The notes under the pieces: generated by a model | Databases searched by the model: none | What the model saw: the letters and a program-made list of their open reading frames with translations, nothing else | What the model was told of the DNA's origin: nothing | In this document: one piece after another, positions 28,430-48,753 of the stretch | Layout: each line of letters opens with the position of its first letter | Position numbering within the stretch: position 1 is the first letter of the stretch | Translations under genes and position numbers: made by a program | DNA from: Zootoca vivipara | Lineage: Eukaryota | NCBI RefSeq assembly: GCF_963506605.1 | Contig: NC_083277.1 | Span: 17,608,001 to 17,672,000 of the forward strand | Length of the DNA: 64,000 nt | Direction: 5' to 3'

Positions 28430-29120
28430 CTTTCCAAGGCGTTGGTCGCTGCTTGCTCCTCTCGGCATCTGCACTACAAACACAAACCGGTTCCAAAACT
28501 AGTTCAGCTAGTCCGGGTCCGCTCTCTCCCAGGGAACTCTGGGAGTTGTAGTTCTGGCGGGGAACAGAGAGACTCCGGCGAAGAGAGGCGCGGCCTCTGG
28601 CGGAACTACAGTACCCGGGCTGCCTTGCAAGGGAAGCCACGACAGCTCCGAGTGCCTGGGTCTTCTTTTTTTCCATGTTTCCCCGCTCGGTACCGCGAAG
28701 TGTGTGGACGTGCTGGCGAGTGTCCTCCGCCTCCTTTCCTCGGAAGCAGCAGCCGGAGCCATTGCCACCGAGGCTGCCTCCTCCTCGCCGCGTTACAAAC
28801 GCGCTCCAGGATCGCGGAGGCTTTGCAGACGCGTCACTTTTGCAGAAACCAAACACCCAGCAGGTAGGAAGGTAAAAAAAGGGAAAAGGTGCGTCTCTAG
28901 GACCTGACCGGAGTTGGGCGAAGTGTGTGAGTCATTCTGGCAGGTCGGGGTGGCCCTGGAAGTGCATCAGAGTTTGGGGTGCTCTCCAGAATAATGCGAG
29001 TAGAGACCCCCCCTAACTCCCGTGATCGCGCGTTCTCACATGCTTTTTTATGCTTCCGCGCTGTTCCTGCTTCTCTTGCAGGTCTTGGGGCTTGGGAGTG
29101 GGTGTGGGTGTGCGGTGGAT
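28430..29120 (+). promoter_or_regulatory. CpG-island promoter and candidate first exon(s) of the KRAB-B/Myb-SANT gene
   Basis: CpG-dense; ZNF143/THAP11-type motif ACTACAACTCCCAG (minus strand, 28539-28552) and ACTACAGTACCC (28605); donor CAG/gtagga after 28863; acceptor before 29082. Confidence 0.65.
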
Positions 29121-30104
29121 CGGGCGAGGAAACAGCAGAAACTTTGCAGAAAGAGAAATCCCCCCCCAATAATGATTGCTAGAAATCCAGAAACAGAGGT
29201 TTCTGCCTCCCACTGAAACACAAGAAGTGGAGAAGGCGATTAGGGAGCTGAGATCCTCCCCCCTCTCCTGCTAAGAACGACTTGTCTGGGCTTAAGGTAG
29301 GGCTGGGGAAAGTAGGATGGTGGTCCGTGCTGGCCGACGTTTTCCCTGGGGCTGTGTAAGCGCAACATGATGGAACTCAGTGGAACTTGTTTCTGAGAAG
29401 ACAGCAATAAACTGGTGGGAGGCTGGGGGCGGGGGGGGGTGTTGTTGTTCCTGTTTATGCCTGCATAAATCCACCCGGATGAGGAAGAGAAGGTTGAGAA
29501 GTCCTGGGCAAGAAGCGAGGTGCTTCTACCCCTGGTTTCTTCAAATTCCCTAAAGAAAATTGAGATCAGTACCGCCACTCTCACTGAAACTCCAATGTCT
29601 TTCTCGTTTTTCAGTCCTGGGGTCCTCAGTTGACACCCTCACCCCTGCGTCCCTCTGTGTGTGGCCTCAGCTGCACAATATTATTATTATTACTGTATTA
29701 TTATTATTTACCTGCCCTTCACACCATGGTCCCAGGGTGGGTTTCATCATTAAAGCGTAACATAAAAACTTACAATCAAGAGAGGTCAATATACACCTCT
29801 GGGGTCAAAAGCTAGGATAAAGAGTCTTCACAGCACTTTAAACAATCATGGCTCCCCCCCCCCAGAATTCTGGGAGTTGTAGTTTGTTAAGGGTGCTGGA
29901 AGTGGTTAGGAGAACCCTGTCCCCCTCTTAGAGCTACGATTCCCAGAGTGGTTTAACAATCAGTTCCTCTTCCTAGGAACCTCTGCGAGCTGAAGCTCTG
30001 TGAGGGGAATAGGGGTCTCCTTCAACAGCTCTCAGCACCCATAACAAACTACAGTTCCCAGGATTCTTTAGCCATGGCTGTTTGTATGGTATGATACTGT
30101 CCAC

Positions 30105-30520
30105 AAACAACAATATTCTGGAGATCCCGAGCCATAAGGTGGCTAGATTGGCCTCAACTAGGGCCAGGGCCTTTTCAGTATTGGCCCCAACTTGGTGGAA
30201 CGCTCTTTCACAGGAGACCAGGGCCCTGCGGGATTTGTCATCTTTCCGCAGGGCCTGCAAGACAGAGCTGTTCCGCCTGGCCTTTGGGTTGGATTCAGTC
30301 TGATCCCTGTGTTTTCCTCCCTCGTGGTTTGGATTTATGGACTACTTAAAATGAGGCTGCATTTTAAATTTTAAATTTTAATATTGTATTTTAATCTGTA
30401 TTTTAATTAATTGTTTTCTTTTCTTTTATGTCTTATTGTAATTTTATTGGTGTTAGCCGCCCTGAGCCTGGTTTTGACTGGGGAGGGCGGGGTATAAATA
30501 CAAATAATTTATTATTATTA
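30105..30520 (+). mobile_element. L2-clade LINE 3' end
   Basis: RARAFSVLAPTWWNALSQETRALRDLSSFRRACKTELFRLAF followed by an AT-rich 3' UTR and (TTA)n. Confidence 0.75.
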
Positions 30521-31004
30521 TTATTATTCAAATTTATACACCACCTTTCATCCAAAAATCTCAGGGCGATTCACAAGATAATGTATAGGGCCCGAGTTCT
30601 GATTTTTATTTTTAGCATGTCACTACTTTAATTATTTACTTTTAAGAGAGAGTTGCAGGTGGCATGAGAGAGGCAGTGTTCTCCAGGTGTGTGTGCGTGC
30701 ATTGTTAGTATCCCCAGGTACGTTATGCTACATTTGCTACTTTGATTTCCTTCTGTCTCGGGACAGTTTCCCAAGCGGTGGCTCTTATTTTTAAACAAAT
30801 CAACAAGGCATTTGGAATCTGGTTTCAGCCACCTTCCTCTCTAGGCAGACACGACTTGCCCATCGTACTCCAAAAAGCATCAGGCAAGATTCCTGGCTGG
30901 GCTTCCAATTAAGATCTCACCTGTTTTAAAGCAGCTGGATTGGTTGCCGGTTCATTTCCAGGCCCAATATAAGGTGCTCAAAATAAGCCCTAAATGCCTT
31001 AGAC

Positions 31005-31427
31005 CAGGCATCCCCAAACTGCGGCCCTCCAGATGTTTTGGCCTACAACTCCCATGATCCCTAGCTAACAGGACCAGTGGTCAGGGATGATGGGAATTGT
31101 AGTCCAAAACATCTGGAGGGCCAAAGTTTGGGGATGCCTGCCTTAGACCCCCCCCCAACTATCTGGAAGACCTTCCTTTCCTGGAGTCCTTCCCGGGTGC
31201 TGTGATAGACAGAAGGGCCCCTCCTGGCAGTTCCTCCACCCTCAGTGGGTGGCAGCCTGGGAGAGGGCATTCTCGGTGGCAACCTCTAAGTCAGGCATAT
31301 GCAAACTCCGGCCCTCCAGATGTTTGGGACTACAATTCTCATCATCCCTAGCTAACAGGACCAGGGGTCAGGGATGATGGGAATTGTAGTTCCAAACATC
31401 TGGAGGGCCGGAGTTTGCCTATGCCTG
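31005..31427. mobile_element. Two ~135-bp hAT-type MITEs (31005-31140, 31292-31427)
   Basis: Same family as 20572; TSD ccttagac (perfect) and ctctaagt/ctctacgt. Confidence 0.85.
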
Positions 31428-31977
31428 CTCTACGTTGTGGGGGTCTCTCCCCACAGAGTGGCACCTCTACTGCACAGCTTCTGGTGGTGGCTAAAGAAAT
31501 AGCTCTCTACCCTTGCTTTTGAGGTGTACATTTTTAGCACCTGCCTTATTTTTGTGACTATAAAACTGTTTTTAATATTGCAGTTTGGTGTTGCAATTCC
31601 CCAGGACCTTAGGGTGAAGGGTGGGCAAGGAATAATAAGACCAACCACAGAGACAGGCTCTCAGCACAGAAAATAATCTCTCCTGAGATTCAGAGGTGGC
31701 ATCTTAGAGCCATTGTCGTTGCTCAACGTATGCATACTCGCGGTCTCTTTCCCCAACCCCACCAGCAGCTGGGATCTCTGTTCAAACTAGTTTTGCGGGT
31801 TTTGATGGTGCTTTTGACGCAGGACCCAGGGAGGAAAAAGCCACCCTGAAATTGCCAGGGTCGGGTGTCCCGGAAGGCTCAGAGCAGCTTCCGAAACCTG
31901 GTGGCTCTCTCAGGGGTGCTGTAGTTGCATCCCTGTATTGTCGATCCTGTATGGAGCAGTGGGGTTGGGCTAGAGCA

Positions 31978-32051
31978 GACCATGGCTGATTATCGGTTAA
32001 ACATCTGGCAAGTTTAGATGACAGATGTTTAACCGATAATCAGCCATGGTC
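31978..32051. repeat. Perfect 30-bp inverted repeat with 14-nt loop
   Basis: gaccatggctgattatcggttaaacatctg (31978-32007) and its exact reverse complement (32022-32051). Confidence 0.9.
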
Positions 32052-32201
32052 AGTCCAGGAGAAGATGGCAAGTATCAGGCAGGAAGTTCCAAGGACAATC
32101 AATATATTTTGATTTTGGGAATGATTCACGTTCTTATGTAGCTGCATCATTTTATACTTTCTGGCTGTCCCATGATCATATTATAAAGCAGTTGTGTTCT
32201 G

Positions 32202-32571
32202 CAGGTGAAACTCGGAAAATTAGAATATCGTCGAAAAGTGCATTTATCTCAGTAATGCAACTTAAAAGGTGAAACCAATATATGAGATAGATGCATGACA
32301 TGCAAAGCAAGATATGTCAAGCCTTTATTTGTTGTAATTGTAATTATTTGTCGTTAGGCGGGTCAATTATAAATGGAATGTAATTAATGAAATGTAATAG
32401 CGATGTTTATTTTTGTATTACCGTATTGTAACTACAGGTATTTGTTTTATTACTGTGGAATTTCCAAAAGAAAGTATTTGTAAAAATTAATAATAATAAT
32501 AATAATAATAAGTTGCATTACTGAAATAAATGCACTTTTCGATGATATTCTAATTTTCCAAGTTTCACCTG
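32202..32571. mobile_element. Tc1/mariner non-autonomous element
   Basis: Long TIR caggtgaaactcggaaaattagaatatcgtcgaaaagtgcattta.. and TA at the right end; second copy at 38251 in opposite orientation. Confidence 0.8.
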
Positions 32572-33155
32572 TATGTTATAAATCAAACGCTGCTAGAAGT
32601 TGTTGCATTCCCCCCTCCCCAATGTATTTCTTAGCAATAAAATACTTTGTGGTATTTGCAAGCAAATTTTTATTCTGAAAGTGTGGCCCAGAGAAAAAAG
32701 TTTCAGAACCACTGGTCTAAAGCAACTAATATAAACAATGTGATAAACATCAATAGTTAAAAATGGCACCAATTCACAGACAGTGACACCTGGTATAATA
32801 GAACGAGCTGTGCAGAGCCAAAGGCTCCAGAAAAAAAATGACAAATTTTAAAGAGAGCTTTGAACATATGGAGTGAGGGGGCAACTCACCACTGCTTCCT
32901 GGAAGGTGATTCCAAGCATATGGAGCATAAAAAGTAAAAGGACCAAGATACGCTAGAGAACAAGAAACTCTTGAATGAGTTAGAAGCACAGAATCAGAAA
33001 GAAAACAGACCAGGCGACCAGGCTTTGGCTTCAACCTTGTTGCGGCATTGAGTGCTCCCAAATGATTCACCTTTTCCTCTGCTTTCCCCCTACATGTCAC
33101 AGTTCCTTGGTAGAAACCGTGGGAAGAGAAATTTGACCCCGTGTATTTCTTCTGG

Positions 33156-33281
33156 ATGGTGGTGACTCTTGAGCCCAACGGTGGTGGGACTTCATCAGGG
33201 AGCTGTTTTGGACCAGAACCAAAGAGCCCTGCGCTGGGGGTGTTGTCATGCAGAACAACTTTGCAAGGATGGCCTTGCTGG
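33156..33281 (+). pseudogene. Degenerate (frameshifted) KRAB-A exon whose 3' end can supply the start codon
   Basis: Three frames give VTLE.. / LDQNQRAL / VMQNNFARMALL(G), matching KRAB-A VTFEDV..LDPAQRALY.DVM.ENY..L.SLG. It ends at a phase-1 donor G/gtaaga, 162 nt before a KRAB-B exon. The expected acceptor reads ..ttctgg rather than ..cag. Confidence 0.6.
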
Positions 33282-33613
33282 GTAAGAACCCCAAATCCTG
33301 CCCCCTCCCCACCCCCAACCTTTCCATCCAGTAATGATGGAATTCTTTTTAGCGTGGACTCTGGAGAACGTCTCCCTAGCCAGTGATGGGTAGAATGGCC
33401 AACTCACCTGGGCCTTGCTGCTCTTCTGCTCCTTCCTGCGCAGGGTTGCCTGTTGAAGAGCCGGAGGTGATCTGCAAGATTGAGTCCGAGGAAGAGCCGT
33501 GGATCCCAAGCGAGCAAGCCGCGAGAGGGAGGCGGATCCTGCCTGGAAGCAGGAAGTTAGGTGAGGGGCCAACTCCACCTGGAAGGGCTAGGGCATGCCT
33601 TCTAACCAGGAAT

Positions 33614-33664
<51 letters not shown>

Positions 33665-36600
33665 ATTTTTATTAAACTTTCTGTTTTACAATTTAGAGAA
33701 TACTCATTTAAGCAACCTGAAAATGTCAGTGGTTTCCCTTCTTTTCTTTCCATGGTTCATTTTGCATATCATAAATCCCTGCATATTTTACATAAACTAA
33801 ACCATTCAGTATTCCATTATTACATGCACCAAAACTGGTTTACACTGTTGAATTTATCTTAATGCTGCCAACCTTTTCAACCTTTTCCCCCATACATTCA
33901 ATAAACATTTTCCAATCTTTAAACATATGTTCTTCTTGTTCTCTTATGTTAGGTCCGCAAGCTGCACTTATTCCATCAGTTTAACCTTTTTTGACACCTA
34001 GGAATTTCCGTCTGGATTATCCCCAGCAAAAAGGACTCTGGTTTCTTTTTTTAAAAAAGTACTTTGAAACATTTTTTCCCCCAATTCATTATGAATTATT
34101 TCCCAATGCTCTTTTACCATTTTACAGTTCCACCACATATGAAAGAATGTTCCCTCAACCTCAATGCAGGGAAGTCTATTCTCCCTCTGTCTGCCCAGAG
34201 TTTGAATGAGCAGGTTACGCTCACCCAGCGTTGAGGAAGATGCACCCTCCTTATTCAAAGCATCAAAGAAGAATCAAAGAATCGTAGAGTTTGAAGGAAC
34301 CACGAGGGTCATCTAGTCCAACCCCATGCAATGCATGAATCTCTTGCCCAATGTAGGGCTCGAACCCACGACCCTGAGATTAACAGTCTCATGCTCTCCC
34401 AACTGAGCTATCCCAGGGGATTCGTGCATTGTGTGCCTCAAGCCTGGCTGCACAGCAGAGTCCACTTGAGGAATGCTGAAAACCTTCTAGTTTCTTAGTT
34501 TCAGATCTAGCGCAGTCCTTATTTTTGTTGAAACAAAATAAAAAAAATCCTTCCAGTAGCACCTTAGAGACCAACTAAGTTTGTCATTGGTATGAGCTTT
34601 CGTGTGCATGCACACTCCTTCAGATTTCGTGCATGCACACAAAAGCTCATACCAATGACAAACTTAGTTGGTCTCTAAGGTGCTACTGGAAGGATTTTTT
34701 TTATTTTGTTTTGAGTACGGCAGACCAACATGGCTACCTACCTGTAACTTATTTTTGTTGATACCTCCTTCTGTTTCAAGAGTTTAAAAATTATTGTACT
34801 GTAATTGTGATGCTTCAGGACACACATGCCCAAAAAAAAAGAATTAAATTTTCTCAGCTCTTTTCTCCCCACCCTGTCCTGTCTGAGTTAACCTTTCTCT
34901 CTCTTTCTCTCTTCACCTCCCTCCCACTTGGCTTCACCTCCATCCCACTTGGCTTTCCAGCTGCCGAAACGCCCGAGCCGGCCATTGCCCCCTACAGGCA
35001 GTATCGCGGCACCACGTGGACCTACCCCGAGATCATAGACCTGCTGGTCATTTGGCGCGAGCGGGAGATCCAGCAGGAGCTGCAGCGGAGCCACCGGAAC
35101 ATCGAGACTTTCCAAGTGGTGGCCAGCAAGATGGCGCAGAGAGGCCACAAGCGCTCTGCCCTGGAGTGCCGCTCCAAGATCAAGACTCTGAAGAGGGACT
35201 ACCGGATAGCCAAGGCCAACAACTCCCCGGGGAAAGGACATTTGGCCTGGCTCTTCTACGACCAGCTCGACCACCTGTTGGCCAACGAGGCGGACCTCTC
35301 ACCCCCAGAGGCGCTGCCCGCCTTGAGCCGCCGCGGGGCGTCTGTCGCCGACTCGATGTCTCAGTGCTCCACCGAGGAGGAAGCTGTGGCGGAGGGGGCC
35401 AAAGCGGGCAGCCAGGAAACGCTGCCTCTAAGGACGCGCTCGCCTCCCCAGGTCCCCAGCCTGGGGGGTGGCTTCCCTATACTGTACATAAAGGAGGAAG
35501 CCCCCGACGAAATGCCCGTGACATCTCCCATGGGTCAGTAGCGGCATTTGGTGTCTGAGGAGACCCCTGTGGAATGAGGTTTTCGAAATAGCCTTTTTTT
35601 TTAAAAAAAAAAGGAATCCCTGGGAGACAGTGTCTTTCATTTTATTTTCTTGCATTTAGATTCCGCCTTTTCTTCCAAGAAGGCTGAGGTAGGGTACATG
35701 GTTGTCCTCCTCATTTAATCCCCCACAACAACCCTGCGAAGTGTCTAAAGGTCCTTTACCTTTACCTTTTACCATGAGATGTAGTGACAGCCGGCCAGCT
35801 TAGATGAGTTTACTGGATAAATTCACGGAGGATAAAAAAAAAAACACCAGTGACTACCTGCCACAATGGCTCCGTAATACCTGCAGCGTTACAGACAGTG
35901 AGTCCTATCCAAAGTAGCAATCAAACCTTGCAAGAGCAGAGCTACTTCCGCTTGTACAGTGAGACTTCCCACCCCCACAGTGAGCTCCCTAAATCTGTTC
36001 TGCGGTTGCCTCCGTGCCTCCAGAACAGATTCGGGGAGGGCATGAAGCATGTGCACGTCCTTCCTCTCATGCAGTTGTTTAGTTATGGGATGTTTAGTCA
36101 GAATCTCCTTTCTTGCAACTTGGTTTTGGTCCTACCCTCTAAATTGCGAGGAAAAAAAAGCTTGCTCCATCGTCCATGTGACAGCCCTTGAGATATTTGA
36201 AGATGGATATCCTATCTCTTCTTTTCCAGGGTAAACATACCCATCTCCTTCAACTGGTCCTCATAAGGCTTGGTTGCCTTTGGCTGCCAGGATTAGTGCT
36301 TGAAGACAACAACACTGTTATATGATGTTCTTGAACTCGATAATCAAAATGCAAGGGCTGGGTTAATGCCCAAGGGACTGCGGTGTGTTTTGTATATAAT
36401 GATCATTTCATTCTGATGCTTTCTGCATTCACACATCTGCCCCAAGCATTTCCTCAGCCCATTCTGCGCAACAACATTGTGTAGCCTGCAAGTGGTTTGT
36501 GATACAATAGACCAGAAGCTTGGGGGGGGGGGCTAGGATTGTTGCTGTGGACAAAGGCCAGCTATGCTCCTGAAATTAATCAATGTTATGTCTGTCTTCA

Positions 36601-37892
36601 GGAATAGCAGAAGCCAGCAGTCCGGCTCCACCTCTGCTGTCTACTCCCTGCGATAAACCGGGCAGCTCTGCCTCAACAGTAGGTAAGAACAGGACAAAAC
36701 AATTACTGTAGATAAGAACTGCCAGTTCCTGAGGTTAATCGTTTGAATGACTGGATGTAAATTAGATGCTCACCTGGGGCAAGGAAGAATCCTTTCTAAT
36801 AGGTGGAGTTAGGTTAATAGGTAGCCTTACTAATTTATAAATCACTTTTTACATACTGTCTCAAGGCAATTTGCAGGCAGGCCACAGAAGGAGCGGAACA
36901 CACAGACACACACGCAAAAGCTATTAAAAGCAGCACCAAAAGCCAACGTTTGAAAAAGTTGACGTTTTCATTTTGTATTGTTAAACCTAAGGCCGTTTCT
37001 GTGTTGAAACAAATTTGTCTTCAGTGTTTCCAGAAATGTTATTCGTTTCCAGAAAGTACTGGTAGCGAGTGCTTGTCTCATGTCAACAGGGACGCTGTTC
37101 GAGGGAACAGCCTTGCAGGTTGGTCTTGCAGCCCACAATTTGCAGCAAGGGATGGATAGGAGCCAACATGTTTGTCTTTACTTCGCACTGTGGCTCAGTT
37201 GAACCAACCCATAGTAGAGAGAGCTTACAGATCAATTTTTTAAAAAATCAAGCTATACCAAAAAATGACACAACACAAAAGGATAATAGGAGGAGAAAGG
37301 AGGGGGGGGGAGAAGCAAACTCATGCACTGCTTCTTAAAGTTAACACTGAAAATCCGAATCATGTTGACTCAGAAAGTCCCACTTTGTTCAATGGGACTT
37401 GCTGTTGAGGAAGTGAGTTCTAAGCATAGTTTTGTTTCGTGCTTTTCAGACGGGGCCATAACCCCCTCCCCAAGTCCCTTGCCTGACCCCGCCAGGTCGT
37501 ACGCCGCAGAGCGCCTCGCCAACATCCGGAAGCGGAAGAGGAAAAACAGGCAGGATCTGGCGCTGGAAATCACCCACGCGGCTGACAGGAGGGTGCAGAC
37601 GGCCACCGACCGGATCCTGGCGGCCCTGGGCGAGTACGCGAAGGCCGATCTGGAGGAGCGGGAGCGGGACCGCGTAGACACTGAACAGATCATTGCGCTC
37701 ATGAACCGCCAGACGGAACTGCTAGAGTCGCTCGTGCGAAAGCAGGCAGAGGCGCAGGCTCCCCCGGCCCCGGCCTTAACCCGGCAGGCCCGGCTACCCC
37801 GGCTCGGGCAGCCCGGTCACGCGGCAGACGCTTCTCCCTTGCGCTTGGGGTCCGCCAGGCGGCCCATGGCGCGGGCGAGGTACCGGAGGTGA
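33248..37892 (+). CDS. KRAB-B-like + Myb/SANT (trihelix, MSANTD/ZSCAN29-type) protein derived from a Harbinger Myb ORF; ~415 aa; exons 33248-33281, 33444-33560, 34961-35533, 36602-36682, 37450-37892
   Basis: All introns are GT-AG and phase 1, and the frame stays open across them (1248 nt). Exon 2 GLPVEEPEVICKIESEEEPW is KRAB-B-like. Exon 3 WTYPEIIDLLVIW..F..VASKM..RGHKRSALECRSKIKTLKRDY is Myb_DNA-bind_4-like. The last exon has basic NLS-like RKRKRKNR and a coiled-coil-like segment. Start codon uncertain (33248 or 33269). Confidence 0.8.
33665..34185 (-). mobile_element. L1-clade LINE 3' fragment (intronic), next to (TC)n
   Basis: Minus-strand CIEVEGTFFHMWWNCKMVKEHWE resembles the L1 ORF2 C-terminal Cys/His motif. 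Confidence 0.65.
34270..34418 (-). mobile_element. tRNA-Lys-derived SINE head with CR1-like tail
   Basis: Minus strand tagctcagttgggagagcatgagactgttaatctcagggtcgtgggttcgagccctacattgggc resembles tRNA-Lys(CTT) with a broken acceptor stem, fused to ggttggactagatgaccc..ctacgattc. Confidence 0.7.
34531..34747. mobile_element. Penelope-like element remnant, inverted terminal duplication (~85-bp arms)
   Basis: ccttccagtagcaccttagagaccaactaagtttgtcattggtatgagctt is repeated in inverse orientation; flanking direct repeat cttatttttgttga. Confidence 0.65.
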
Positions 37893-38608: not shown

Positions 38609-38659
38609 TGTATGTATATATATGTGTGTGTGTGTGTCACATATATGGGACCTTAGGTT

Positions 38660-40930: not shown

Positions 40931-40938
40931 TGCATATA

Positions 40939-41188: not shown

Positions 41189-41549
41189 TACTTTAGTTCA
41201 GAATCCAGCATTGGAGAGGGTTGGATATTTAGATTACCTTCCAGTTGTCTTCCATCTCGCCAATTTTATGATTCTATGGAAGAGTGTACCTTGGGGGGTA
41301 AAGTCAAACCGCTGGAGAGTCACAGCGCCTGCTGTGGCTGTAGAGACTGATGTAGGAGAGACATGTTTTGTTGAAGGTGGGGCAGATGAAGGTATCCAGT
41401 TGTGCCGCTGCAGATGCCCCATGGCGTTTCTTCTCTCTGGGCTCCTCCCAGCAGTCATTCCTCCTCTGGTCACTGCTGTGGATGCCTGACCCATGGTGAC
41501 AGGGCACAGTCATGATGCCTAAGTGTAGCAGGAAGAACTGCATCGCAGG

Positions 41550-42290
41550 CAGGGCCGGATTTAGGTCTGATGAGGCCCTAAGCTACTGAAGGCCCTAAGC
41601 TACTTTATATGTCCAGCCGTCCTTTGTCAACAACAAAGGGTCACTGTTTTTGGTGTTGAATATACCGTATGCTATAAGGTAATTTGTGGGACGCGGGTGG
41701 CGCTGTGGGTTAAGCCACAGAGCCTAGGGCTTGCCGCTCAGAAGGTCGGCGGTTCGAATCCCTGTGAGGGGGTTGCTCGGTCCCTGCTCCTGCCAACCTA
41801 GCAGTTCGAAAGCACCTCAAAGTGCAAGTAGATAAAAAGGTACCGCTACAGTGGGAAGGTAGGCATTTCCGTGTGCTGCTCTGGTTCGCCGGAAGCAACT
41901 TTGTCATGCTGGCCACATGACCTGGAAGCTATACGCCGGCTCCCTCGGCCAATAACGCGAGATGAGCGCCGCAACCCCAGAGTCAGTGATGACTGGACCT
42001 AATGGTCAGGGGTCCCTTTACCTTATAAGGTAATTTATGGACCTAACAGGTATCTAAAGCCATTTGCACATGTTGCCATGCAACCAGTCCATGCAGAATG
42101 TAGGCACCCTATATCTAGAAAGAGCAAACCTGTGATATTTTAGGGAGCAGGCTAGCTTACTATATGTAGCTTTTATTTGTTTTTTATCTTATATTTTGGA
42201 AATGTACACCCAGGGTGTTTTTTTTTTTTTGGCCCCCAAGAGAGTGGGGCCCTAAGCTATAGCTTAGATTTATAGGTAAATCCGGCACTG
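41550..42290. mobile_element. hAT non-autonomous element carrying a nested Sauria SINE
   Basis: TIR cagggccggattta / taaatccggcactg; 8-bp TSD atcgcagg. Confidence 0.85.
41688..42023 (+). mobile_element. Sauria SINE, near full length
   Basis: gggacgcgggtggcgctgtgggtt..ggttcgaatccc..ggtccctttacc; TSD tataaggtaattt. Confidence 0.9.
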
Positions 42291-42329
42291 ATCGCAGGCA
42301 CAGTCTTGGTGAAGAAGCCGACCCAGAAT

Positions 42330-43022
42330 AACAACTCCCAGAAGCAGGCGGGCTTTAGGACCCTGAGGGGAGCTGACACGTAAGAGATCTTCGGGCGCAG
42401 CCGCCACAGGAAGAGGATCTCCTCGGCCCCGTGGCTCTCGGAGGAGGGTGTGCTGCCGATCCTGGATTCGTGTCTCTTCTTGCACGCTGCACGCGCGTTT
42501 CCTGCGTGCATTTGCAGAATCCGCGAGACCTCCAGGAAGTGGGGGATCCCAGGAGATCCCAGTCTTCTCTGCTGCTTACAAGGCGGAGGAATCGTGCGGG
42601 GGGTGGGCGGATTTAAGAAACCCAACTTTGCCCGGAGAGCCGAGCCGATCCTGGGGGTGAATCTGAGATCTTTTCATCTCCCAGATGGAGCGACCAGGAT
42701 GATTCCTGTGGTCCGCAGCTTGCGATAAAGGAGCCTGGCGCCTCCCTGAATGCAAACGGGAGGATGGGATAAGGAAGACGCCGACAAGGCTGGATCAAGT
42801 GGGAATCCGTAGGCGGAAGGTGGCTCGAGATCTGGATGGTTTGCAGTAGATCGGCAAGGGCTTCCAGCGCTCGGTCGTCCCATCAGCAGTGAAGAAATGA
42901 TATTCTCCACCTAAACATAAATTCCTGAACTGCGGGGGGGAGGGGGATTCCTGCGTTAAATTCAGCTCCGGCTCAATTCCTTTCTGGCCCTGGAAATAAA
43001 TTATTGCTGCTCAGAACACAAG
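42330..43022 (+). promoter_or_regulatory. CpG-rich candidate promoter/first exon of the Harbinger-transposase gene
   Basis: Local CpG enrichment not explained by a repeat, GC boxes, donor AAG/gtaact after 43022. Confidence 0.45.
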
Positions 43023-43967
43023 GTAACTCCACCGGCGCCCTTAAGCCGCTTTGGATTATAGCTCCCATTGTCCCTGACCTTTGGGAATGCAGGCTGGGTC
43101 GTAGTTTGAAGTATCAGAAGCCCCACACTGGCTGCCCCTGCCCTAGAGCAAGGTTTCCCAAACTTTGGTCTGCAGCTGTTTCTGGACTACAATTCCCATC
43201 ACCCCGACCCCTGGTCCTGCTAGCTAAGGATGATGGGAGTTGTAGTCCCAAAAAAACCAACCACAGTTGGCGACCCACCTTTGGGAAAACCCCGCCCTGG
43301 AGGCATGCCTTTTGCATCTGGCTCTGGTTGGAAGCTCTTGGTCTTCTAGGTAAAAATAAATAGGATATTAGACAAACCGGAAGACTGACTGCCTCTGATT
43401 TAGCTATATATTGTCTGCAGCTGCAGCCAGTGGCAAGTCTCCAAAGTCCTGGCACTGTGGGACTCCAGTTCCCATCAGCCACAGGCAACGTAGCCAGTGA
43501 CCAGGGACGGTGGACGTTGTTGCCCCCAGCTATCCTCCCCCCTCATCCCTGCCATAGCCAGGTCCCAAGCCTTCTCAGGCTAGCGGCCTGAAATCCTGAG
43601 GTCCCTGGGATTAAACCTAAGACCTCCTCCACCGCAGAGGAGTGGCCACCTTCCCCAATCCCAGCCCAATCCTGTGCATGTTTCTTTTGGAGCAAGTGCC
43701 AATGAGTTCAGCGAGACTGACTTCCCAGGAAGCTTGTTTAAGGGTCGCTATTTTAAGTTGGCAGCCGCCTGCACAATTTCCTAGAAATGGGTCCAACACA
43801 GACTTCTTCTGCACTATACCATTACTGTAAACCAGCGTCATGACACTTGAAAGGCTGTGGTTTACCCCCAAGAATGCTGGGAACTGGAAACAGTGTTGTT
43901 TAACCCCAGGGAACTCTGGGAATAATGTCTCTGCAGGTGGAATAGGGGTCTTCTACCTGCCTCACTA

Positions 43968-44307
43968 GGGACGCAGGTGGCGCTATGGTCTAAACCAGAG
44001 CCTAGGGCTTGCCGATCAGAAGGTCGCCGGTTCAAATCCCCATGAGGGGGTGAGCTCCCGTTGCTCGGTCCCTGCTCCTGCCAACCTAGCAGTTCGAAAG
44101 CACGTCAAAGTGCAAGTAGATAAATAGGTACCGCTCCGGTGGGAAGGTAAGTGCCGTTTCTGTGCACTGCTCTGGTTCGCCAGAAGCGTCTGTCATGCTG
44201 GCCACATGACCCGGAAACTGTACGCCGGCTCCCTTGGCCAATAAAGTGAGATGAGCGTCGCAAGCCCAGAGTCGTCCGCGACTGGACTTAACGGTCACGG
44301 GTCCCTT
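43968..44307 (+). mobile_element. Sauria SINE, full length
   Basis: Complete head and tail; TSD tacctgcctcacta. Confidence 0.9.
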
Positions 44308-44983
44308 TACCTGCCTCACTAAGCCAATGGCTCATCCAATGGCCTGTGGGGAGGTTTGCCAGCAGGCTGGAGCACAACAGTTGCCCCGCTGCACTTCCCA
44401 GTGACTGGTAGTCAGAGGCATGCAATGACACTCGGCACCTTTAACAAACTACATTTCCCAGAATTCTTCGGGGGGAAGCCATTAATCTTTTTTTGAACGG
44501 AATGATACTGCTTTAAATGTACAGTACAGATGGGGATGTGGTGTTGCTGTGGGGTCTGGTGGGCATTAAAATAGCGGATAAACCACAATGCCTGGCACTG
44601 TTCAGAGCGCTGGGTAGATCTGCTCTGATGCCCAAGGATGTGAGGCACATTGCCCCTGCTCAGTATGGTCATACAGAGTATGTGAGTGTCTCCAGTCTCT
44701 TGATGATTTTGGTTCCATTTTTCTGGAGCTTTTTCAGCTCTACCAGGAAACCAAGCTGTAATTCCTGCATTCGAATCATAGAGTTGGAAAGGGACCACAC
44801 GGGTCATCTAGTCCAACCCCCTGCAATGCAGGATTCTTTTGCTCGAACCCACGACCCTGAGATTGAGAATCTCATGCTCCACCAACTGGATGACGTTTGA
44901 GGTCCCTTCCAACTCTACAATCCTATGAAAATCTGTTCCAGACCCTACTCTGCTCAGCACATGCTTGGATGATTATCATCTTT

Positions 44984-45035
<52 letters not shown>

Positions 45036-45450
45036 GATACACCAAAAGGGGGGGGGACAAAAATACAAATCTAAACAGTGATAAAGACAGTATGAATTAC
45101 AAATCAATAAAGCAAAAAGTGGTCCTTGAACTATAGACCCGACCTCCCGTCTATTCCTTATTTCAGTTATATATTACAGTATTTGTTGCCAGTACCCACT
45201 TTTATCATAGATTAACTAATTATTGGTTTATCTTAGGTCTCATATCTTTCTTAAAGCTACTACTGAAATTATTCAGATGCTGGGAGGATGATTATAATCT
45301 TTGGAGCTTCTCATCTTGTAAAGGCAGCATCTTGGCGCAGTAGGAGCGGCAGGCCTTGTTGGGATCTGCCAGCCCCTGGCGGTTGCCTTTGTTCTGGCTT
45401 CTCTTTCCTGATTAGGTTCTCCTTTCTTAAAGCCTAAGGTGAGGTTGAGG

Positions 45451-48400
45451 ATGGAGAGAGAAGATGAAACGTGGAACCTCCAGGACCCTGAGAAAGAGGA
45501 GATGCCAAGGAATAGCAGCTCAGGTAAGGACTCGGACAGAAAAACTAAACAGAAGAGTATTTCAATGGCAACCATGTGAGTCATAAGTTTGATTTCATCA
45601 GGTGGGAGGTGGATGTGCTTTGCTGGCTTTTGCATCCCTTCTGTCTGGTGTGCTTTTGAAGTACAGTCGTACCTCGGAAGTCGAACAGAATCCGCTCCAT
45701 AAGTCAGTTCGACTTCCAAAACGTTTGAAAACCAAGGCGTGGCTTCCAGTTGGCTGCAGGAAGCTCCTGCCGCCAATCAGAAGCCGCGTCGGACGTTCGG
45801 GTTCCAAAGAATGTTTGCAATCCGGAACTATCACTTCCGGGTTTGCAGCGTTCGGGAGGCGTTCAGAAGGCGTTCGTCAACCAAGGTATGACTGTATATC
45901 TAAACTAGGTATCCTCTGCCCACAATAAGTTGCTCGTTTCACAAAGCAGGAGAATAAGCTAGCGTTTTTGTTTATATTTGTAACTCTCGCATAGCTATTG
46001 AGAGACTTAAAAGATGCGTGCCTAGGTACATGTTCATAGAATTAAAAGAGGGTAGGGATTTTTTCTTTCTTTTTTTAGTTTATTAGATTTGAGAATGAGG
46101 GTGTGTGACCAAGAAGAGCCTTCAAGGGCTGCTGTGAAGGGTGTGCATGCGAAACTGATAAACAAGGCAGTTTCCACTTCCTTCTCAGGCTTCCAAGAAC
46201 ATACCAGTCCGGCCCTAGCTTGTGCAAACTCTTGTAGTGCAAACTCTGGGATGTTTTCAGCTTTTGAGAGATTAAACCAACATGTCAAGGTCGGTTTTTA
46301 CTCTCAACGGCTGGCAAAACACAAAAGAATTTCAGCATTTCCTGCTACAAGCAGGAAATCTCTCTCTTTTTAATTCTATCCTATTCAATGTAAAACAACA
46401 ACAAAATCCTGGACCTACAGAAGTAGCCTGGCCTTTTCCATGACTGCAAGTTTCAAACGTGGAAATTCTCCTTGTACAGGAGGAAGCATTCAAATATTTG
46501 GGAGGGAGGGCAGGATCCAGGGCCTGAGCTTAACTGGGGGGGAAATTGAGATAGGGCTGAAAAGTAGAAGCATAGCTGGATGGCACTGTGCTACAGTTAG
46601 AAAATTGGGGGGGGGCAGCAGGGGACAAAGAAGGGAGAGTGGTGGATAGGTGGCAAAAGAGTGGGAATAGGGTGAGGAGCAACAATAGGTTATTTTCTGA
46701 TTGATTAAGATCAGGCATCCCCAGACTTCGGCCCTCCAGATGTTTTGGACTAAATAAATTTAAGGAACTGCAGAAAGAGGGAAAAGGAAGTCGAGTTTTG
46801 AAATGTTAGAAGAATTGTAAAATTATTGAAATGTCAAAAACTGAAAATCATTTTTTAAAAACCATGCACTGCGTGAAAAAAACCCTTTCTTTTAGAGGCC
46901 CCACCTAATCAGCAGGATAAGGTCCAGTTGTAGAATGAGGCATAGCTGCCAAGTTTTCCCTTTTCTCGCGAGGAAGCCTATTCAGCATAAGGGAAAATCC
47001 CTTAAAATAAGGGATAACTTGGCAGCTATGGAATGAGGTGACCATTTCTATTGAGTTGCAATATAAATAATAATAATATAAATAAAAATAATAATATAAA
47101 TAAACAAATGCCACTGAACACTGAACCTGGCCTAAAATGCAAGTAAAGTCCATTTCTGGAAATGAGGAGGTCTGTAGCTTAGCCAGAGAGAGGCTACTTG
47201 GCCTGTACCTTCAGCCTCAAGCATCTCCTGCTCAGGCCAAAGCTGGTGTGAGGCTCTTCCCCACTGAGGCTCCTGGGACCCACTGCCTAAAAGACATGGA
47301 GCTCCATCGCCAGAATCTCCCCTAGTACAAAACAGCTAATTCCTGGTGTTCCCAAAACAGTCTCTCTTGTCTTTCCTCTTCTCCAGAAAGCGATCAGATG
47401 GTGTCAGCAGCTCTCGCCGCCGCCACAGCTGCCGTGGCTGCCATCACGACCGTCGTGGGGGTCCAGTCGCGCATCTTTGCACGGCTGGCAACACGCCGGA
47501 AGCTTCTGCCGCGAGGGCGCGACGACCTGGCCGAGCTGGAGGAGATGGTGGAGAACGCTGCATCGGTGCGCCTCCGAGCGGTGGTGGAGTCGAGCATCGA
47601 CTCTCTGAAGGCTATGATGTGCTCGTGCCTCTTCCAGTCGCCGGCTGTCCTGGCTGGCCTGATTGACGAGCTCTACATCATGGAGAGGGCCTTCTGGGTG
47701 CAGCCGGGCCGCTCCGAATGGTGGGAGAAAGTGGTCCTGCCCCACTGGGACGACCATCTCTGGCGAGAGAACTTCCGGATGAGCAGGAGGACCTTCACGG
47801 AGCTGTGCGATCGGCTGAGGCCCGTCCTCGAGCGGCAGACCACCAACATGCGCGCTCCGATCACCGTCGAGAAGCAGCTGGCCATCGCCGTCTGGAAGCT
47901 GGCCACCCCGGATAGCTATCGCTCGGTGGCCGAGTGCTTTGGGGTGGGCCGCTCCACGGTCTCCAGGATCGTCATGGAAGTCTGCCAAGCGCTCTACGAC
48001 GTCTACCACCACGTGGTCCAGCTGGCCGGTGCCCAGGAGGTGATGAAAGGCTTCGCTGCCAAGGGCTTCCCTCACTGCATCGGGGTCCTCGACGCCACCC
48101 ACATCCCCATCATCGCCCCGGCGCACAGAGCCACCGAGTACATCAACAGCAAAGGCTACTACTCCATGGTCCTGCAGGTTCTGGTGGACCACAGAGGCAG
48201 GTTCACGGACGTCTATGCAGGGCGCTCCGGGAAGCTTCCCGGCGCCCGGATTTTCCGTGGGTCGCCCATCTTCCGCGCCATGAACCAAGGCACATTTGGT
48301 CCCAGCGTGACCATGGACATGGGGGGCGAGCAGCTGAAGCCGGTGATCCTCGGAGACCCCGCTTACCCGCTGCTGGCCTGGCTGATGACTCCGTACGGCG

Positions 48401-48753
48401 GGCACTTGGATGCCCGCCAACAGTGGTTCAACAACGCCCTCGCCAGCTGCCACGCGGTGGCAGAGTCCGCCTTCGAGCGCCTTCGGGGCCGCTGGCGCTG
48501 CCTGCTCTCCCGCCTGGACGTGAGGGAGCGCTACGCCCCCCGGGTCATTGTGGCCTGCTGCATCCTGCACAACATTTGCGAGACCAGAGGGGAGCCTCTC
48601 CAGGAAGGCTGGCAGGAAGTGGTCAGATCCGTCTCGCGGTCTTACCAGCAGCCAGAAAGGCAGCCAGTGTACGCAGCCAACCCCCGAGCGCGGGAGATCA
48701 GGGATCTTTTGAGCACGTACATGGAAAGGAAAGAGCAGGGGAAGTCGGACTGA
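45451..48753 (+). CDS. KRAB-B-like + PIF/Harbinger transposase-derived protein (HARBI1/ALP1-like, DDE_Tnp_4); ~479 aa; exon 45416-45523 spliced to 47387-48753
   Basis: Intact 451-codon ORF (47398-48753) with WRENFRMSRRTF, HTH YRSVAECFGVGRSTV, GVLDATHIPI, YINSKGYYS, ILGDPAYPL, ESAFERLRGRWRCL, ACCILHNICE. The upstream 108-nt phase-1 exon (GSPFLKPKVRLRMEREDETWNLQDPEKEEMPRNSSS) joins in frame via the acceptor at 47385-47386 and contains ATG 45451 in strong context (aggATGG). The transposase call is solid; the 5' exon is a model. Confidence 0.85.
46941..47030. mobile_element. 90-bp hAT-type MITE, copy 2
   Basis: Identical to 10479-10568; 8-bp TSD gaatgagg. Confidence 0.9.

What the first reader, a model, noticed from the sequence alone, without database searches (positions are those of the whole stretch)
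28430..48753. Both genes of a PIF/Harbinger transposon apparently co-domesticated as a linked tandem pair (Myb/SANT + transposase)
Seen: a 5-exon intact Myb/SANT gene followed, in the same orientation and ~7.5 kb later, by an intact HARBI1/ALP1-like transposase gene. Both have clean splice sites and GC/CpG-rich codons. Introns and spacer are filled with many unrelated TEs, yet no coding exon is hit, and I saw no enclosing TIRs. Known: autonomous Harbingers encode exactly these two interacting proteins, with the Myb protein binding DNA and importing the transposase. Domesticated pairs exist (vertebrate HARBI1/NAIF1; plant ALP1/ALP2 and HDP1/HDP2 in chromatin regulation) but are typically unlinked. 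Inference: an immobilised Harbinger was kept as a two-component, sequence-targeted chromatin or transcription module in squamates, distinct from the HARBI1/NAIF1 orthologues.
Basis: partly seen in the sequence, partly recalled or inferred. Interest (0 to 1): 0.9.

Follow-up and report, generated by a model that had tools for sequence, protein, structure and literature searches.

The report
Linked domesticated Harbinger gene pair
In the common lizard the two genes of an ancient Harbinger jumping gene sit side by side as ordinary, intron-bearing host genes that lizards have kept for roughly 200 million years; this is a new vertebrate example of a kind of transposon taming already known from insects, plants and the HARBI1/NAIF1 pair.

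Summary
The window is Zootoca vivipara. An intact Myb/SANT gene (LOC118080950, 415 aa, five coding exons at 33248-37892 plus a 5' exon near 28.5 kb) is followed on the same strand by an intact Harbinger-type transposase gene (LOC118080949, 479 aa). The transposase gene is not a single ORF: a short KRAB-B-like exon (45451-45523) splices to 47387-48753.

Both are host genes, not a live transposon.
- Each has one 70-96% identical orthologue per species across geckos, skinks, lacertids, amphisbaenians, anguimorphs and iguanians.
- Both lie on the same chromosome, with adjacent gene numbers where those can be read.
- The nearest other relatives are about 50% identical, mostly multi-copy turtle proteins.
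- There are no enclosing TIRs, and each gene has its own CpG island.

Co-domestication from one insertion is the best reading (about 0.65). That the two proteins work as a complex is inferred only.

Two caveats. No Myb partner was found in snakes, which do keep the transposase gene. The third catalytic residue also drifts (E/D/G).

Linked co-domesticated PIF pairs are already known in insects, and Anolis Harbinger ORFs were called domesticated in 2010. This is therefore a new member of a known kind. The scan holds notes on other Harbinger-derived genes elsewhere in this genome, but none on this pair.

The parts
28430..29250 (+). 5' exon and CpG-island promoter region of the Myb gene. It is non-coding in the main Zootoca model and supplies an alternative N-terminus in Podarcis isoform X3.
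   Evidence: tblastn of P0123 residues 4-112 onto 28683-28973. CpG island at 28501-29250, with GC 0.55-0.60 and CpG o/e 0.69-0.79. Exon borders were not determined.
33248..33281 (+). Myb gene coding exon 1. It holds the start codon and 'MQNNFARMALLG', which looks like the tail of a KRAB-A box.
   Evidence: Exact reconstruction of P0121 with a GT donor. The upstream frame holds stop codons. It aligns to the KRAB-A tail of turtle P0186. Pfam KRAB does not match.
33444..33560 (+). Myb gene coding exon 2, KRAB-B-like ('LPVEEPEVICKIESEEEPW...').
   Evidence: AG/GT borders. 40% identity over 46 residues to the KRAB-A tail plus KRAB-B of P0186. 15 of 50 N-terminal columns are invariant across 9 species.
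34961..35533 (+). Myb gene coding exon 3: the Myb/SANT (trihelix) DNA-binding domain plus the start of the disordered linker.
   Evidence: PF13837 E 2e-17. 82 of 100 domain columns are invariant from geckos to lacertids. Modelled with pLDDT about 90.
36602..36682 (+). Myb gene coding exon 4, a 27-codon linker exon that some isoforms skip.
   Evidence: It is absent from Podarcis isoforms P0122 and P0123.
37450..37892 (+). Myb gene last exon. It holds a basic cluster (RKRKRKNR, a candidate nuclear import signal), an 88-residue continuous helix (residues 284-371) and the stop codon.
   Evidence: Helix modelled with pLDDT 85-97. 62 of 88 columns are invariant. Homologous to the C-terminal part of the turtle Myb-like protein P0204.
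42250..43000 (+). CpG island and alternative first exon of the transposase gene (coding 'MQTGGWDKEDADKAGSSGNP' at 42750-42809 in isoform X1/X2 models).
   Evidence: CpG island. tblastn of P0001 residues 1-20, 90% identity. P0354 (Zootoca isoform X1) carries this N-terminus. An RNA-type contig covers 42700-42960.
45451..45523 (+). Coding part of the KRAB-B-like exon of the transposase gene (start codon, 'MEREDETWNLQDPEKEEMPRNSSS', GT donor). The exon itself begins some 20-35 nt upstream ('GSPFLKPKVRLR').
   Evidence: The spliced translation is identical to P0351. The exon's peptide is present in all 26 orthologues, including snakes. There is a short match to KRAB-B of P0186.
47387..48753 (+). 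Main exon of the transposase-derived gene. It encodes N-terminal helices, an HTH region and the DDE_Tnp_4 catalytic-type core (D at 'VLDATH', D at 'LGDPAY', E at 'AVAESAF'), then the stop codon.
   Evidence: PF13359 E 8e-32. AG acceptor at 47385-47386. Model mean pLDDT 83, pTM 0.75. Motif table. Sense-strand RNA reads in X21 and X22, and contigs in X1 and X3.

Best explanation
What it is. One PIF/Harbinger transposon that inserted beside MGAT1 before the radiation of living squamates lost its ends, and both of its genes became host genes. They are still adjacent and co-oriented. Each gene acquired its own CpG-island promoter, introns and a KRAB-B-like 5' coding exon. The Myb gene also keeps the last 12 residues of a KRAB-A box.

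Shown:
- Both genes are intact.
- Each has one slowly evolving orthologue per lizard species.
- They stay linked.
- Conservation is concentrated in the DNA-binding domains, in the Myb protein's long C-terminal helix, and in residues 96-235 of the 479-aa transposase protein (the conserved N-terminal block and the HTH region).
- Spliced transcripts exist.

Inferred mechanism:
- The Myb protein binds specific DNA through its trihelix domain and carries the basic nuclear-import cluster.
- Its 88-residue C-terminal helix binds the N-terminal helices of the transposase-derived protein, as mapped for Ping and for ALP1/ALP2, and takes that protein into the nucleus and onto chromatin.
- The complex then acts as a sequence-targeted regulator rather than as a transposase. 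The third catalytic residue is allowed to change (E, D or G), and lacertids have lost the neighbouring HD motif.
For: Orthologue pattern, transposase. Thirteen squamate clusters are 79-96% identical to the window ORF, then identity drops sharply to 50% or less in multi-copy turtle proteins. The 14 orthologues sampled form one clade (SH-aLRT 100) with a stem of 0.46 and tips of 0.008-0.11 changes per site, broadly following squamate groups. Turtle copies form bushy within-species radiations.

Orthologue pattern, Myb. Nineteen lizard orthologues are 67-88% identical over the full length, with no closer paralogue than 48%.

Linkage. LOC118080949/118080950 are adjacent here. Heteronotia has LOC132572327/8 and Phrynocephalus has JRQ81_003390/392. 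Both genes lie on the same chromosome or scaffold in Podarcis muralis, P. raffonei, Rhineura, Varanus (21.5 Mb), Sphaerodactylus, Pogona and Tiliqua.

Constraint.
- Invariant columns: 82/100 in the Myb domain against 23/124 in the linker; in the transposase protein, 54/65 at residues 96-160, 64/75 in the HTH region and 129/190 in the DDE core.
- 3.6% of possible substitutions in the ORF create a stop codon. At only 0.1 neutral changes per site, the chance of no stop is 0.0055 per lineage, yet 26 species have it open.
- Of 10 variants seen in Zootoca runs, 7 are synonymous where 24% are expected (binomial P 0.0035).

Host-gene anatomy. All borders are GT-AG and the translations match NCBI models exactly. 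The two genes have separate CpG islands. There are no TIRs.

Expression.
- Sense-strand reads on the ORF in two RNA runs, with zero depth in the adjacent unique intron.
- Logan contigs of 1.7-1.8 kb encode the whole 485-aa protein, including the upstream exon.
- Logan contigs of 1.7-2.6 kb encode the whole 410-aa Myb protein. These contigs are too short to be unspliced.

Harbinger origin of both genes. The Myb protein aligns over residues 59-385 to the turtle Myb-like protein P0204, C-terminal helix region included. Turtles also hold the nearest multi-copy transposases.

Interaction precedent. The C-terminal part of the Myb-type protein binds the transposase in ALP2/ALP1 and in Ping (PMC7282668). 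The Myb-like protein imports the transposase by binding its N-terminal end (Sinzelle 2008, as summarised in PMC9392472). The models show a long helix in each protein.
Against: - Synteny outside this window therefore rests on gene numbering and chromosome identity, and dN/dS was not computed.
- No snake Myb orthologue or paralogue was found, although 13 snake species keep the transposase gene at 94% identity or more among the snakes compared. Either the partner is dispensable there or it is not annotated.
- The Myb gene has two squamate paralogue families with the same C-terminal helix, and a turtle gene has the same KRAB-plus-Myb layout. The Myb gene could therefore come from a host gene family rather than from this insertion.
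- The acidic triad is largely kept: D1 in 26 of 26, D2 in 25 of 26, and E or D at the third position in 24 of 26. A nuclease role is not excluded.
- The splice junction 45523>47387 was not seen in the reads that were laid, because coverage was too low.
Confidence: 0.65

Rival explanations
1. The two genes share a history but do not work together. They may have come from one insertion, but the transposase-derived protein now acts alone or with other partners, and the Myb protein is an independent transcription factor. Linkage then persists only because nothing has broken it.
For: Snakes keep the transposase gene (13 species, 483 aa), but no Myb orthologue was found for them. The two genes have separate CpG-island promoters about 14 kb apart. 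The complex prediction gave no support, which by the tool's own rules is not evidence either way.
Against: The parts that mediate the interaction in other Harbinger pairs are among the best conserved here: the Myb C-terminal helix (62/88 columns invariant) and residues 96-160 of the transposase protein (54/65 invariant). The transposase-derived protein has no obvious conserved basic import signal, whereas the Myb protein has RKRKRKNR (read directly from the sequences). Linkage has held across roughly 200 My of squamate history.
Confidence: 0.2
2. The genes have independent origins. The Myb gene is a duplicate of an older KRAB/SCAN-Myb host gene family, and the transposase gene was domesticated from a separate insertion that happened to land next to it.
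For: Squamates have two Myb paralogue families (about 528 aa and about 335-358 aa) that share the C-terminal helix, the 528-aa family lying on the same chromosome in four species. A conserved turtle gene (P0186) has the same layout of KRAB-A tail, KRAB-B and Myb. Many ZSCAN20/29-like reptile proteins carry this Myb domain.
Against: Adjacency and shared orientation are kept in geckos, lacertoids and iguanians. The Myb protein keeps the whole architecture of a transposon Myb-like protein, not just the DNA-binding domain. The turtle gene's Myb domain visibly resembles the turtle transposon protein P0204 more than the squamate gene does (sequences shown; not aligned to each other), which points to separate captures. 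No closer paralogue than 48% exists.
Confidence: 0.12
3. The pair is a live or only recently immobilised Harbinger transposon.
For: Both ORFs are intact and the D-D-E triad is present in Zootoca.
Against: - No TIRs were found.
- The gene pair spans 20 kb and carries host-type exons and introns.
- There is a single orthologue per species at a conserved position.
- The nearest paralogue is 54% identical or less.
- Exon read depth is 2-11, against 10^3-10^4 for the repeats in the introns and spacer.
Confidence: 0.01

Closest known systems
Linked co-domesticated PIF/Harbinger pairs of insects: DPLG7-DPM7 in Drosophila, APLG1-APM1 and APLG2-APM2 in Anopheles, LPLG2-LPM2 in Lepidoptera (PMC9710019)
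   Same: Both the transposase gene and the DNA-binding-protein gene of one PIF insertion are kept as adjacent single-copy host genes. They lack TIRs and TSDs and are under purifying selection. In most cases only one partner has a nuclear import signal.
   Different: Those DNA-binding partners are of the MADF type and the pairs are 28-140 My old. This pair is in a vertebrate, has a trihelix Myb_DNA-bind_4 partner, is at least as old as crown squamates, and each gene has gained a KRAB-B-like 5' exon and its own promoter.
HARBI1 / NAIF1 of vertebrates (Kapitonov and Jurka 2004; Sinzelle 2008, as summarised in PMC9392472)
   Same: A Harbinger transposase-derived gene and a Myb-like-derived gene are kept together in a vertebrate lineage. 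Their proteins interact, and NAIF1 imports HARBI1 into the nucleus.
   Different: HARBI1 and NAIF1 are unlinked and are shared by jawed vertebrates, mammals included. The genes here are lineage-restricted. Their nearest relatives are sauropsid transposon copies at about 50% identity, and no mammalian protein is among the best 120 hits. They are therefore a separate and later domestication.
ALP1/ALP2 and HDP1/HDP2 of Arabidopsis (PMC7282668, PMC5339849)
   Same: These are co-domesticated Harbinger pairs. The Myb-type partner binds the transposase-type partner through its C-terminal region and bridges it to chromatin complexes. Catalysis is not the retained function.
   Different: They are plant genes, unlinked, and their chromatin partners (PRC2 via MSI1; a histone acetyltransferase complex) were shown experimentally. 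Nothing of that kind is known here, and this transposase keeps most of its acidic triad.
Five PIF/Harbinger ORFs of Anolis carolinensis proposed as domesticated (Novick et al. 2011, PMC3014272)
   Same: Intact 442-466-aa Harbinger transposase ORFs without TIRs or TSDs in a lizard. The orthologue of this gene is very probably one of the five.
   Different: That paper gives one paragraph on the ORFs alone. It reports no orthologues in other squamates, no Myb partner, no linkage and no upstream exons.
Host-transposase fusion genes, especially KRAB-transposase fusions (Cosby et al., bioRxiv 10.1101/2020.05.07.082677)
   Same: Transposon coding sequence is spliced to host 5' exons of KRAB type. True KRAB-DDE_Tnp_4 fusions exist in a turtle (P0014, KRAB E 1e-24) and in kiwi (P0072).
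   Different: Here the KRAB-A box is gone in both genes and Pfam KRAB gives no match. Only KRAB-B-like peptides remain, so recruitment of KAP1 is unlikely. Both transposon genes were captured, not one.

Membership tests
PIF/Harbinger transposase (protein family) | DDE_Tnp_4 catalytic-type domain | tested here: met
   PF13359 E 8e-32 at residues 231-392 of the ORF; PF04827 E 1e-6.
PIF/Harbinger transposase (protein family) | Acidic D-D-E triad | tested here: met
   Present in Zootoca (VLDATH, LGDPAY, AVAESAF). Across 26 orthologues, D1 is kept in 26, D2 in 25, and the third position is E in 12, D in 12 and G in 2. Lacertids lack the 'HD' motif and the R four residues before the E.
PIF/Harbinger transposase (protein family) | RNase H-like transposase fold | tested here: inconclusive
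   The model is confident (pLDDT 83, pTM 0.75). The best solved matches are transposases and integrases (ISCth4, E 0.013, TM 0.29-0.35), but all are weak. No Harbinger transposase structure is solved.
Harbinger transposon (mobile element) | Terminal inverted repeats and 3-bp TTA/TAA target duplications around both genes | tested here: not met
   The only long inverted repeat around the pair is a dispersed repeat that also occurs at 24.9 and 56.4 kb. Short degenerate TIRs about 200 My old would not be detectable.
Harbinger transposon (mobile element) | Multiple near-identical copies in the genome | tested here: not met
   There is one protein cluster per species. The nearest paralogues are 54% identical or less. 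Exon read depth is 2-11, against 10^3-10^4 for neighbouring repeats. No whole-genome nucleotide search was possible.
Harbinger Myb-like protein | Myb/SANT trihelix domain (Myb_DNA-bind_4) with its conserved aromatic residues | tested here: met
   PF13837 E 3.5e-17. W70, W82 and Y131 are nearly invariant across the family alignment.
Harbinger Myb-like protein | C-terminal region shared with transposon-encoded Myb-like proteins | tested here: met
   Alignment to turtle P0204 runs from residue 59 to 385, including the helix region. That P0204 is transposon-encoded is inferred from its layout, not shown.
Domesticated transposon gene | Single-copy orthologues at the same locus in distant species | tested here: inconclusive
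   One orthologue per species in 26 species (transposase) and 19 species (Myb). Synteny was read only from adjacent gene numbers and shared chromosomes. Orthologous DNA could not be fetched.
Domesticated transposon gene | Purifying selection (dN/dS well below 1) | not testable with these tools
   No orthologous coding DNA was available. Three proxies all point to constraint: domain-wise invariance, ORF survival odds, and 7 of 10 within-species variants being synonymous.
Domesticated transposon gene | Transcribed and spliced as a host gene | tested here: met
   The NCBI models equal the spliced translation. Short Logan contigs encode the full proteins of both genes. Sense-strand RNA reads lie on the ORF. 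The Zootoca junction itself was not seen in the reads.
HARBI1 / NAIF1 orthologues | Highest similarity to HARBI1 or NAIF1 of other vertebrate classes, mammals included | tested here: not met
   The best 120 transposase hits are sauropsid only, and the named Myb hits are squamate only. The label 'HARBI1' is attached to three different squamate clades. No true HARBI1 or NAIF1 sequence was available for a direct tree.
KRAB domain proteins | KRAB-A box (PF01352) | tested here: not met
   No KRAB match at E up to 1 for P0121, P0001 or P0003, whereas P0014 and P0072 match at E 1e-24 and 5e-22. Only the last 12 residues of a KRAB-A box and KRAB-B-like peptides remain.
Linked co-domesticated PIF pair (as in insects) | Physical interaction of the two proteins | not testable with these tools
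   The one structure-based test returned no verdict. See Tried and rejected.

The most novel reading that the evidence does not exclude
The pair is not merely a tamed DNA-binding scaffold. In most squamates it would still be a working, Myb-targeted DNA-cutting enzyme used by the host for some programmed DNA transaction. Both aspartates are kept almost everywhere, the third acidic residue is E or D in 24 of 26 species, and the HD motif survives in all but lacertids. Lacertids, two iguanian or snake species with G at the third position, and one viper with G at the second aspartate would then be natural loss-of-catalysis variants. Snakes would run the enzyme without the Myb partner.
Probability: 0.1. 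Interest if true: 0.85.

Novelty: new member of a known kind. Interest (0 to 1): 0.6.

Why it matters
This would be the second co-domesticated Harbinger pair known in vertebrates, after HARBI1/NAIF1, and the first that is still physically linked. At roughly the age of crown squamates, it would also be older than the linked insect pairs.

The biological role of HARBI1/NAIF1 is still unknown. An independent pair in animals where gene editing works (Anolis sagrei, geckos) offers a second route to asking what such complexes do.

The locus also shows both transposon genes being fitted with KRAB-type 5' exons. That joins two known routes to new regulators: co-domestication and transposase capture.

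The natural variation gives ready-made comparisons for separating catalytic, DNA-binding and partner-binding roles. Snakes have no detectable Myb partner, lacertids have lost the HD motif, and the third catalytic residue is E, D or G depending on lineage.

Tried and rejected
No orthologous DNA could be fetched, so there is no direct synteny map and no dN/dS.
- Complex prediction, whole transposase ORF against Myb residues 269-415: no verdict, score 0.01 against a mark of 0.34.
- Read laying: coverage of the gene in the two raw RNA runs was a few reads only. The 45523>47387 junction was not listed, and most signal came from intronic and spacer repeats.
- TIR search: the striking inverted repeat that brackets the pair is a dispersed repeat. 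Rejected as TIRs.
- Fold search against the PDB: only weak matches to DDE transposases and integrases, adding nothing beyond Pfam. The sequence search of solved structures found nothing.
- Rate covariation between the two proteins: Spearman 0.79 on 8 non-independent lineages, confounded by lineage-wide rates and by one isoform difference. Not used as evidence.
- The search of earlier findings by sequence: blank.
- The careful tree search did not finish in time. The quick tree with SH-aLRT support was used instead.
- Papers: the published version of Cosby et al. was not held, and the preprint does not mention Harbinger or lizards in its text. 'MSANTD7', NCBI's similarity-based label for two of the orthologues, is an alias at the human HSPA14 locus. 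It was not pursued as an orthologue.
- Spliced models were never sent to a search tool as joined letters. Searches used single-exon references or database protein ids (P0121, P0351). The only joining was an in-script check that the spliced translation equals those database proteins.

Full report
**1. What is in the window**

The window is from Zootoca vivipara. The Myb exon is 100% identical to NCBI LOC118080950 (P0121), and the transposase gene is LOC118080949 (P0351).

The 451-codon ORF at 47398-48753 (+) matches Pfam DDE_Tnp_4 at E 8e-32. The ORF at 34807-35541 contains Myb_DNA-bind_4 at E 2e-17.

Mapping the annotated proteins back onto the window gives exact gene models.
- Myb gene: five coding exons at 33248-33281, 33444-33560, 34961-35533, 36602-36682 and 37450-37892. 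All have GT-AG borders, and this is the only combination that reproduces P0121. A further 5' exon and CpG island lie at about 28.5-29.25 kb.
- Transposase gene: it is not a single ORF. Its conserved start codon lies in a short exon at 45451-45523, which splices to 47387-48753. The result is 479 aa, identical to XP_034962893.1.
- An alternative first exon at 42750-42809 sits in a second CpG island at 42.25-43.0 kb. The two genes therefore look like separate transcription units on the same strand.

MGAT1 is a single exon at 13679-15028, and histone H2A-like genes follow at 54-64 kb. The window contains no N.

**2. Not a transposon**

The only long inverted repeat bracketing the pair (26.3-26.8 kb against 50.5-51.0 kb) is 87% identical over 510 bp. 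It also occurs at 24.9 and 56.4 kb, so it is a dispersed repeat and not a pair of TIRs.

Read depth over the coding exons is 2-11, while repeats in the introns and spacer reach 10^3-10^4.

No near-identical paralogue exists among annotated proteins. The closest other transposase-type proteins are 54% identical or less.

**3. Conservation of the transposase gene**

The search returned a group of squamate proteins 79-96% identical to the ORF, then a sharp drop to about 50% in multi-copy turtle proteins. The squamate group comprises Podarcis, Heteronotia, Sphaerodactylus, Varanus, Thamnophis, Pogona, Anolis sagrei, Phrynocephalus and Rhineura, plus Tiliqua and 13 snake species through cluster members.

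In trees the orthologues form one clade (SH-aLRT 100) with a long stem (0.45-0.46) and very short tips (0.008-0.11). Turtle sequences form bushy within-species radiations of the kind expected of a transposon family.

Gecko-to-lacertid identity is 80-82% and gecko-to-skink identity is 88%. Squamates have an evolutionary history of over 200 My (PMC10379679).

**4. Conservation of the Myb gene**

Nineteen lizard orthologues are 67-88% identical over the full length. The next relatives are paralogues at 41-48%.

Conservation is mosaic:
- Myb domain: 82 of 100 columns invariant across nine species, from geckos to lacertids.
- C-terminal helix region: 62 of 88.
- Linker: 23 of 124.

The transposase-derived protein shows the same pattern: 54/65 invariant at residues 96-160, 64/75 in the HTH region, 129/190 in the DDE core, and 0/24 in the first exon.

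**5. Linkage**

In Zootoca the two genes carry consecutive numbers and are adjacent, which validates the use of numbering as a proxy. The other species give:
- Heteronotia: LOC132572327/8.
- Phrynocephalus: JRQ81_003390/392.
- Rhineura: LOC133380896/902.
- Podarcis raffonei: LOC128408904/915.
- Podarcis muralis: LOC114588406/424.

In Varanus (a 21.5-Mb scaffold), Sphaerodactylus, Pogona and Tiliqua both genes lie on the same sequence. Linkage is therefore supported in Gekkota, Lacertoidea and Iguania, and is compatible with the data elsewhere.

**6. Selection**

dN/dS could not be computed. Three proxies agree.
- The domain-wise mosaic of conservation described above.
- ORF survival. 3.6% of possible substitutions in the transposase CDS, and 3.5% in the Myb CDS, create a stop codon. 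At only 0.1 neutral substitutions per site the chance of no stop in one lineage is 0.0055 (transposase) or 0.013 (Myb), yet 26 and 19 species have intact genes.
- Within-species variants. Of ten variants seen in Zootoca-labelled runs within the ORF, seven are third-position synonymous, against 24% expected (binomial P 0.0035). This last sample is small, and five of the ten are A>G changes, which could include RNA editing.

**7. Expression**

Two raw RNA-seq runs gave a few reads on the ORF. All had the first mate on the minus strand, the usual sign of plus-strand RNA in stranded libraries. Depth was zero in the unique intron sequence just upstream. Two contig-type runs hold 220-650-nt pieces of the ORF. 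The splice junction itself was not listed.

There is independent support from other squamates. Logan contigs of 1.7-1.8 kb encode the complete 485-aa protein, including the peptide of the upstream exon, and contigs of 1.7-2.6 kb encode the complete 410-aa Myb protein. These lengths are incompatible with unspliced genomic DNA if the introns are anything like those here.

**8. Anatomy that bears on function**

The Myb protein begins with 'MQNNFARMALLG' followed by 'LPVEEPEVICKIESEEEPW'. These align to the end of the KRAB-A box and to the KRAB-B box of a turtle KRAB-Myb protein (P0186). The frame upstream of the start codon contains stops, and Pfam KRAB does not match.

The transposase gene's first coding exon reads 'GSPFLKPKVRLRMEREDETW'. 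This again fits the KRAB-B pattern, and its peptide is present in all orthologues, including snakes. This agrees with the scan's notes s1-850935 and s1-850936.

The Myb model has a confident trihelix domain and a single 88-residue helix (residues 284-371, pLDDT 85-97), preceded by the basic cluster RKRKRKNR. The transposase model (pLDDT 83) has three long N-terminal helices of moderate confidence in front of a confident core.

[quoted passage not shown] This is the layout expected of a transposon-encoded protein.

In Arabidopsis ALP2 and in rice Ping, the C-terminal part of the Myb-type protein binds the transposase (PMC7282668). In zebrafish Harbinger, the Myb-like protein imports the transposase by binding its N-terminal end (Sinzelle 2008, as summarised in PMC9392472).

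**9. Catalytic residues**

This table extends note s1-850989.

| Feature | State across the 26 orthologues |
|---|---|
| First aspartate | Kept in 26 of 26 |
| Second aspartate | Kept in 25 of 26 (G in Vipera latastei) |
| Third residue | E in geckos, skink, Rhineura, Varanus, lacertids, pythons and boas; D in caenophidian snakes, Anolis and Pogona; G in Thamnophis elegans and Phrynocephalus |
| 'KVHD' motif | Changed to 'KLPG' in lacertids only |
| Arginine four residues before the glutamate | Changed to H in lacertids only |

The 37 residues that follow the variable glutamate site by four residues are almost invariant. Catalysis therefore looks less constrained than the scaffold, but the triad is far from abandoned, and I do not regard loss of nuclease activity as shown.

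**10. Caveats for the 'pair' reading**

No snake Myb orthologue or paralogue appeared in any search, although snakes keep the transposase gene. This could be a real loss or an annotation gap.

The Myb gene also has two squamate paralogue families with the same helix. The 528-aa family lies on the same chromosome as the pair in four species. A host-family origin for the Myb gene therefore cannot be excluded without a tree that includes transposon ORFs.

**11. Comparison with what is known**

- Unlinked pairs are known in vertebrates (HARBI1/NAIF1) and in plants (ALP1/ALP2, HDP1/HDP2).
- Novick et al. (PMC3014272) listed five TIR-less Harbinger ORFs in Anolis as probable domestications, without partners or orthologues.
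- Etchegaray et al. (PMC9392472) describe the MSANTD genes and do not mention lizards.

I found no paper describing this pair. It is best filed as a new member of a known kind: the first linked Harbinger pair in a vertebrate, with KRAB-type exon capture on both genes.

**12. Limits**

- The complex prediction returned no verdict.
- Spliced models were not sent to search tools as joined letters. Exon references or database ids were used, and the only joining was an in-script identity check.

Noticed in passing
Not in the window: proteins P0105/P0361-P0374 (clade B) and P0055, P0063, P0064, P0074, P0360 (clade C): Squamates have at least two further squamate-wide, slowly evolving Harbinger-transposase gene clades. 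Clade B comprises 451-aa proteins that are at least 90% identical from geckos to snakes and are often mislabelled 'IGFBP-3 receptor' (TMEM219). Clade C comprises 432-aa proteins in which both catalytic aspartates are glycine. Both fit the scan notes s1-853068 and s1-850512, and the five Anolis ORFs of Novick 2011.
   Followed up: partly
Not in the window: P0291 (Zootoca LOC118081260), P0311/P0314 (LOC118081250), same chromosome: The Myb gene has paralogues on the same chromosome that keep the long C-terminal helix (44% identity over 366 residues). Their gene numbers place them about 300 genes away. Scan note s1-848611 reports a domesticated Harbinger transposase 7.58 Mb upstream, so there may be a second linked pair, or a duplicated pair.
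   Followed up: no
Not in the window: snake proteins P0005, P0328-P0341: Thirteen snake species keep the transposase orthologue (483 aa), but no snake Myb orthologue or paralogue appeared in any search. Either the partner was lost in snakes or it is unannotated.
   Followed up: partly
window 48226-48237 and 48445-48447 (codons for 'KLPG' and for H of 'CHAVAE'): Only lacertids (Zootoca and three Podarcis species) replaced the conserved 'KVHD' with 'KLPG' and the arginine four residues before the catalytic glutamate with histidine. The lacertid stem branch is also the longest in the orthologue clade (0.11-0.12).
   Followed up: yes
Not in the window: turtle protein P0186 and its 24-member cluster: A gene conserved across turtles has the same layout as the Myb gene here: a truncated KRAB-A, then KRAB-B, then a Harbinger-type Myb domain. 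Its Myb domain resembles the turtle transposon type, which points to an independent capture.
   Followed up: partly
window 34531-34711: An 83-nt inverted repeat with 99% complementary arms 15 nt apart, in the intron just upstream of the Myb-domain exon. It looks like a young MITE-like or hairpin insertion.
   Followed up: no
window 26308-26796 and 50508-51027 (also 24872-25129 and 56359-56537): Copies of one dispersed repeat family in opposite orientation bracket the gene pair almost exactly. At first sight they mimic long TIRs.
   Followed up: yes
window 54248-54949 (-), 57954-58433 (+), 63176-63970 (-): Three near-identical H2A-like genes with a long lysine- and alanine-rich C-terminal tail lie downstream of the pair. 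This is the subject of scan note s1-850965.
   Followed up: no
window 46708-46752 and 46937-47030: RNA reads pile up (hundreds deep) and join 'opposite strands' around 46743-46752, with loose ends of many different sequences. This is a highly expressed, palindromic high-copy repeat in the intron of the transposase gene, and is not signal from the gene itself.
   Followed up: no
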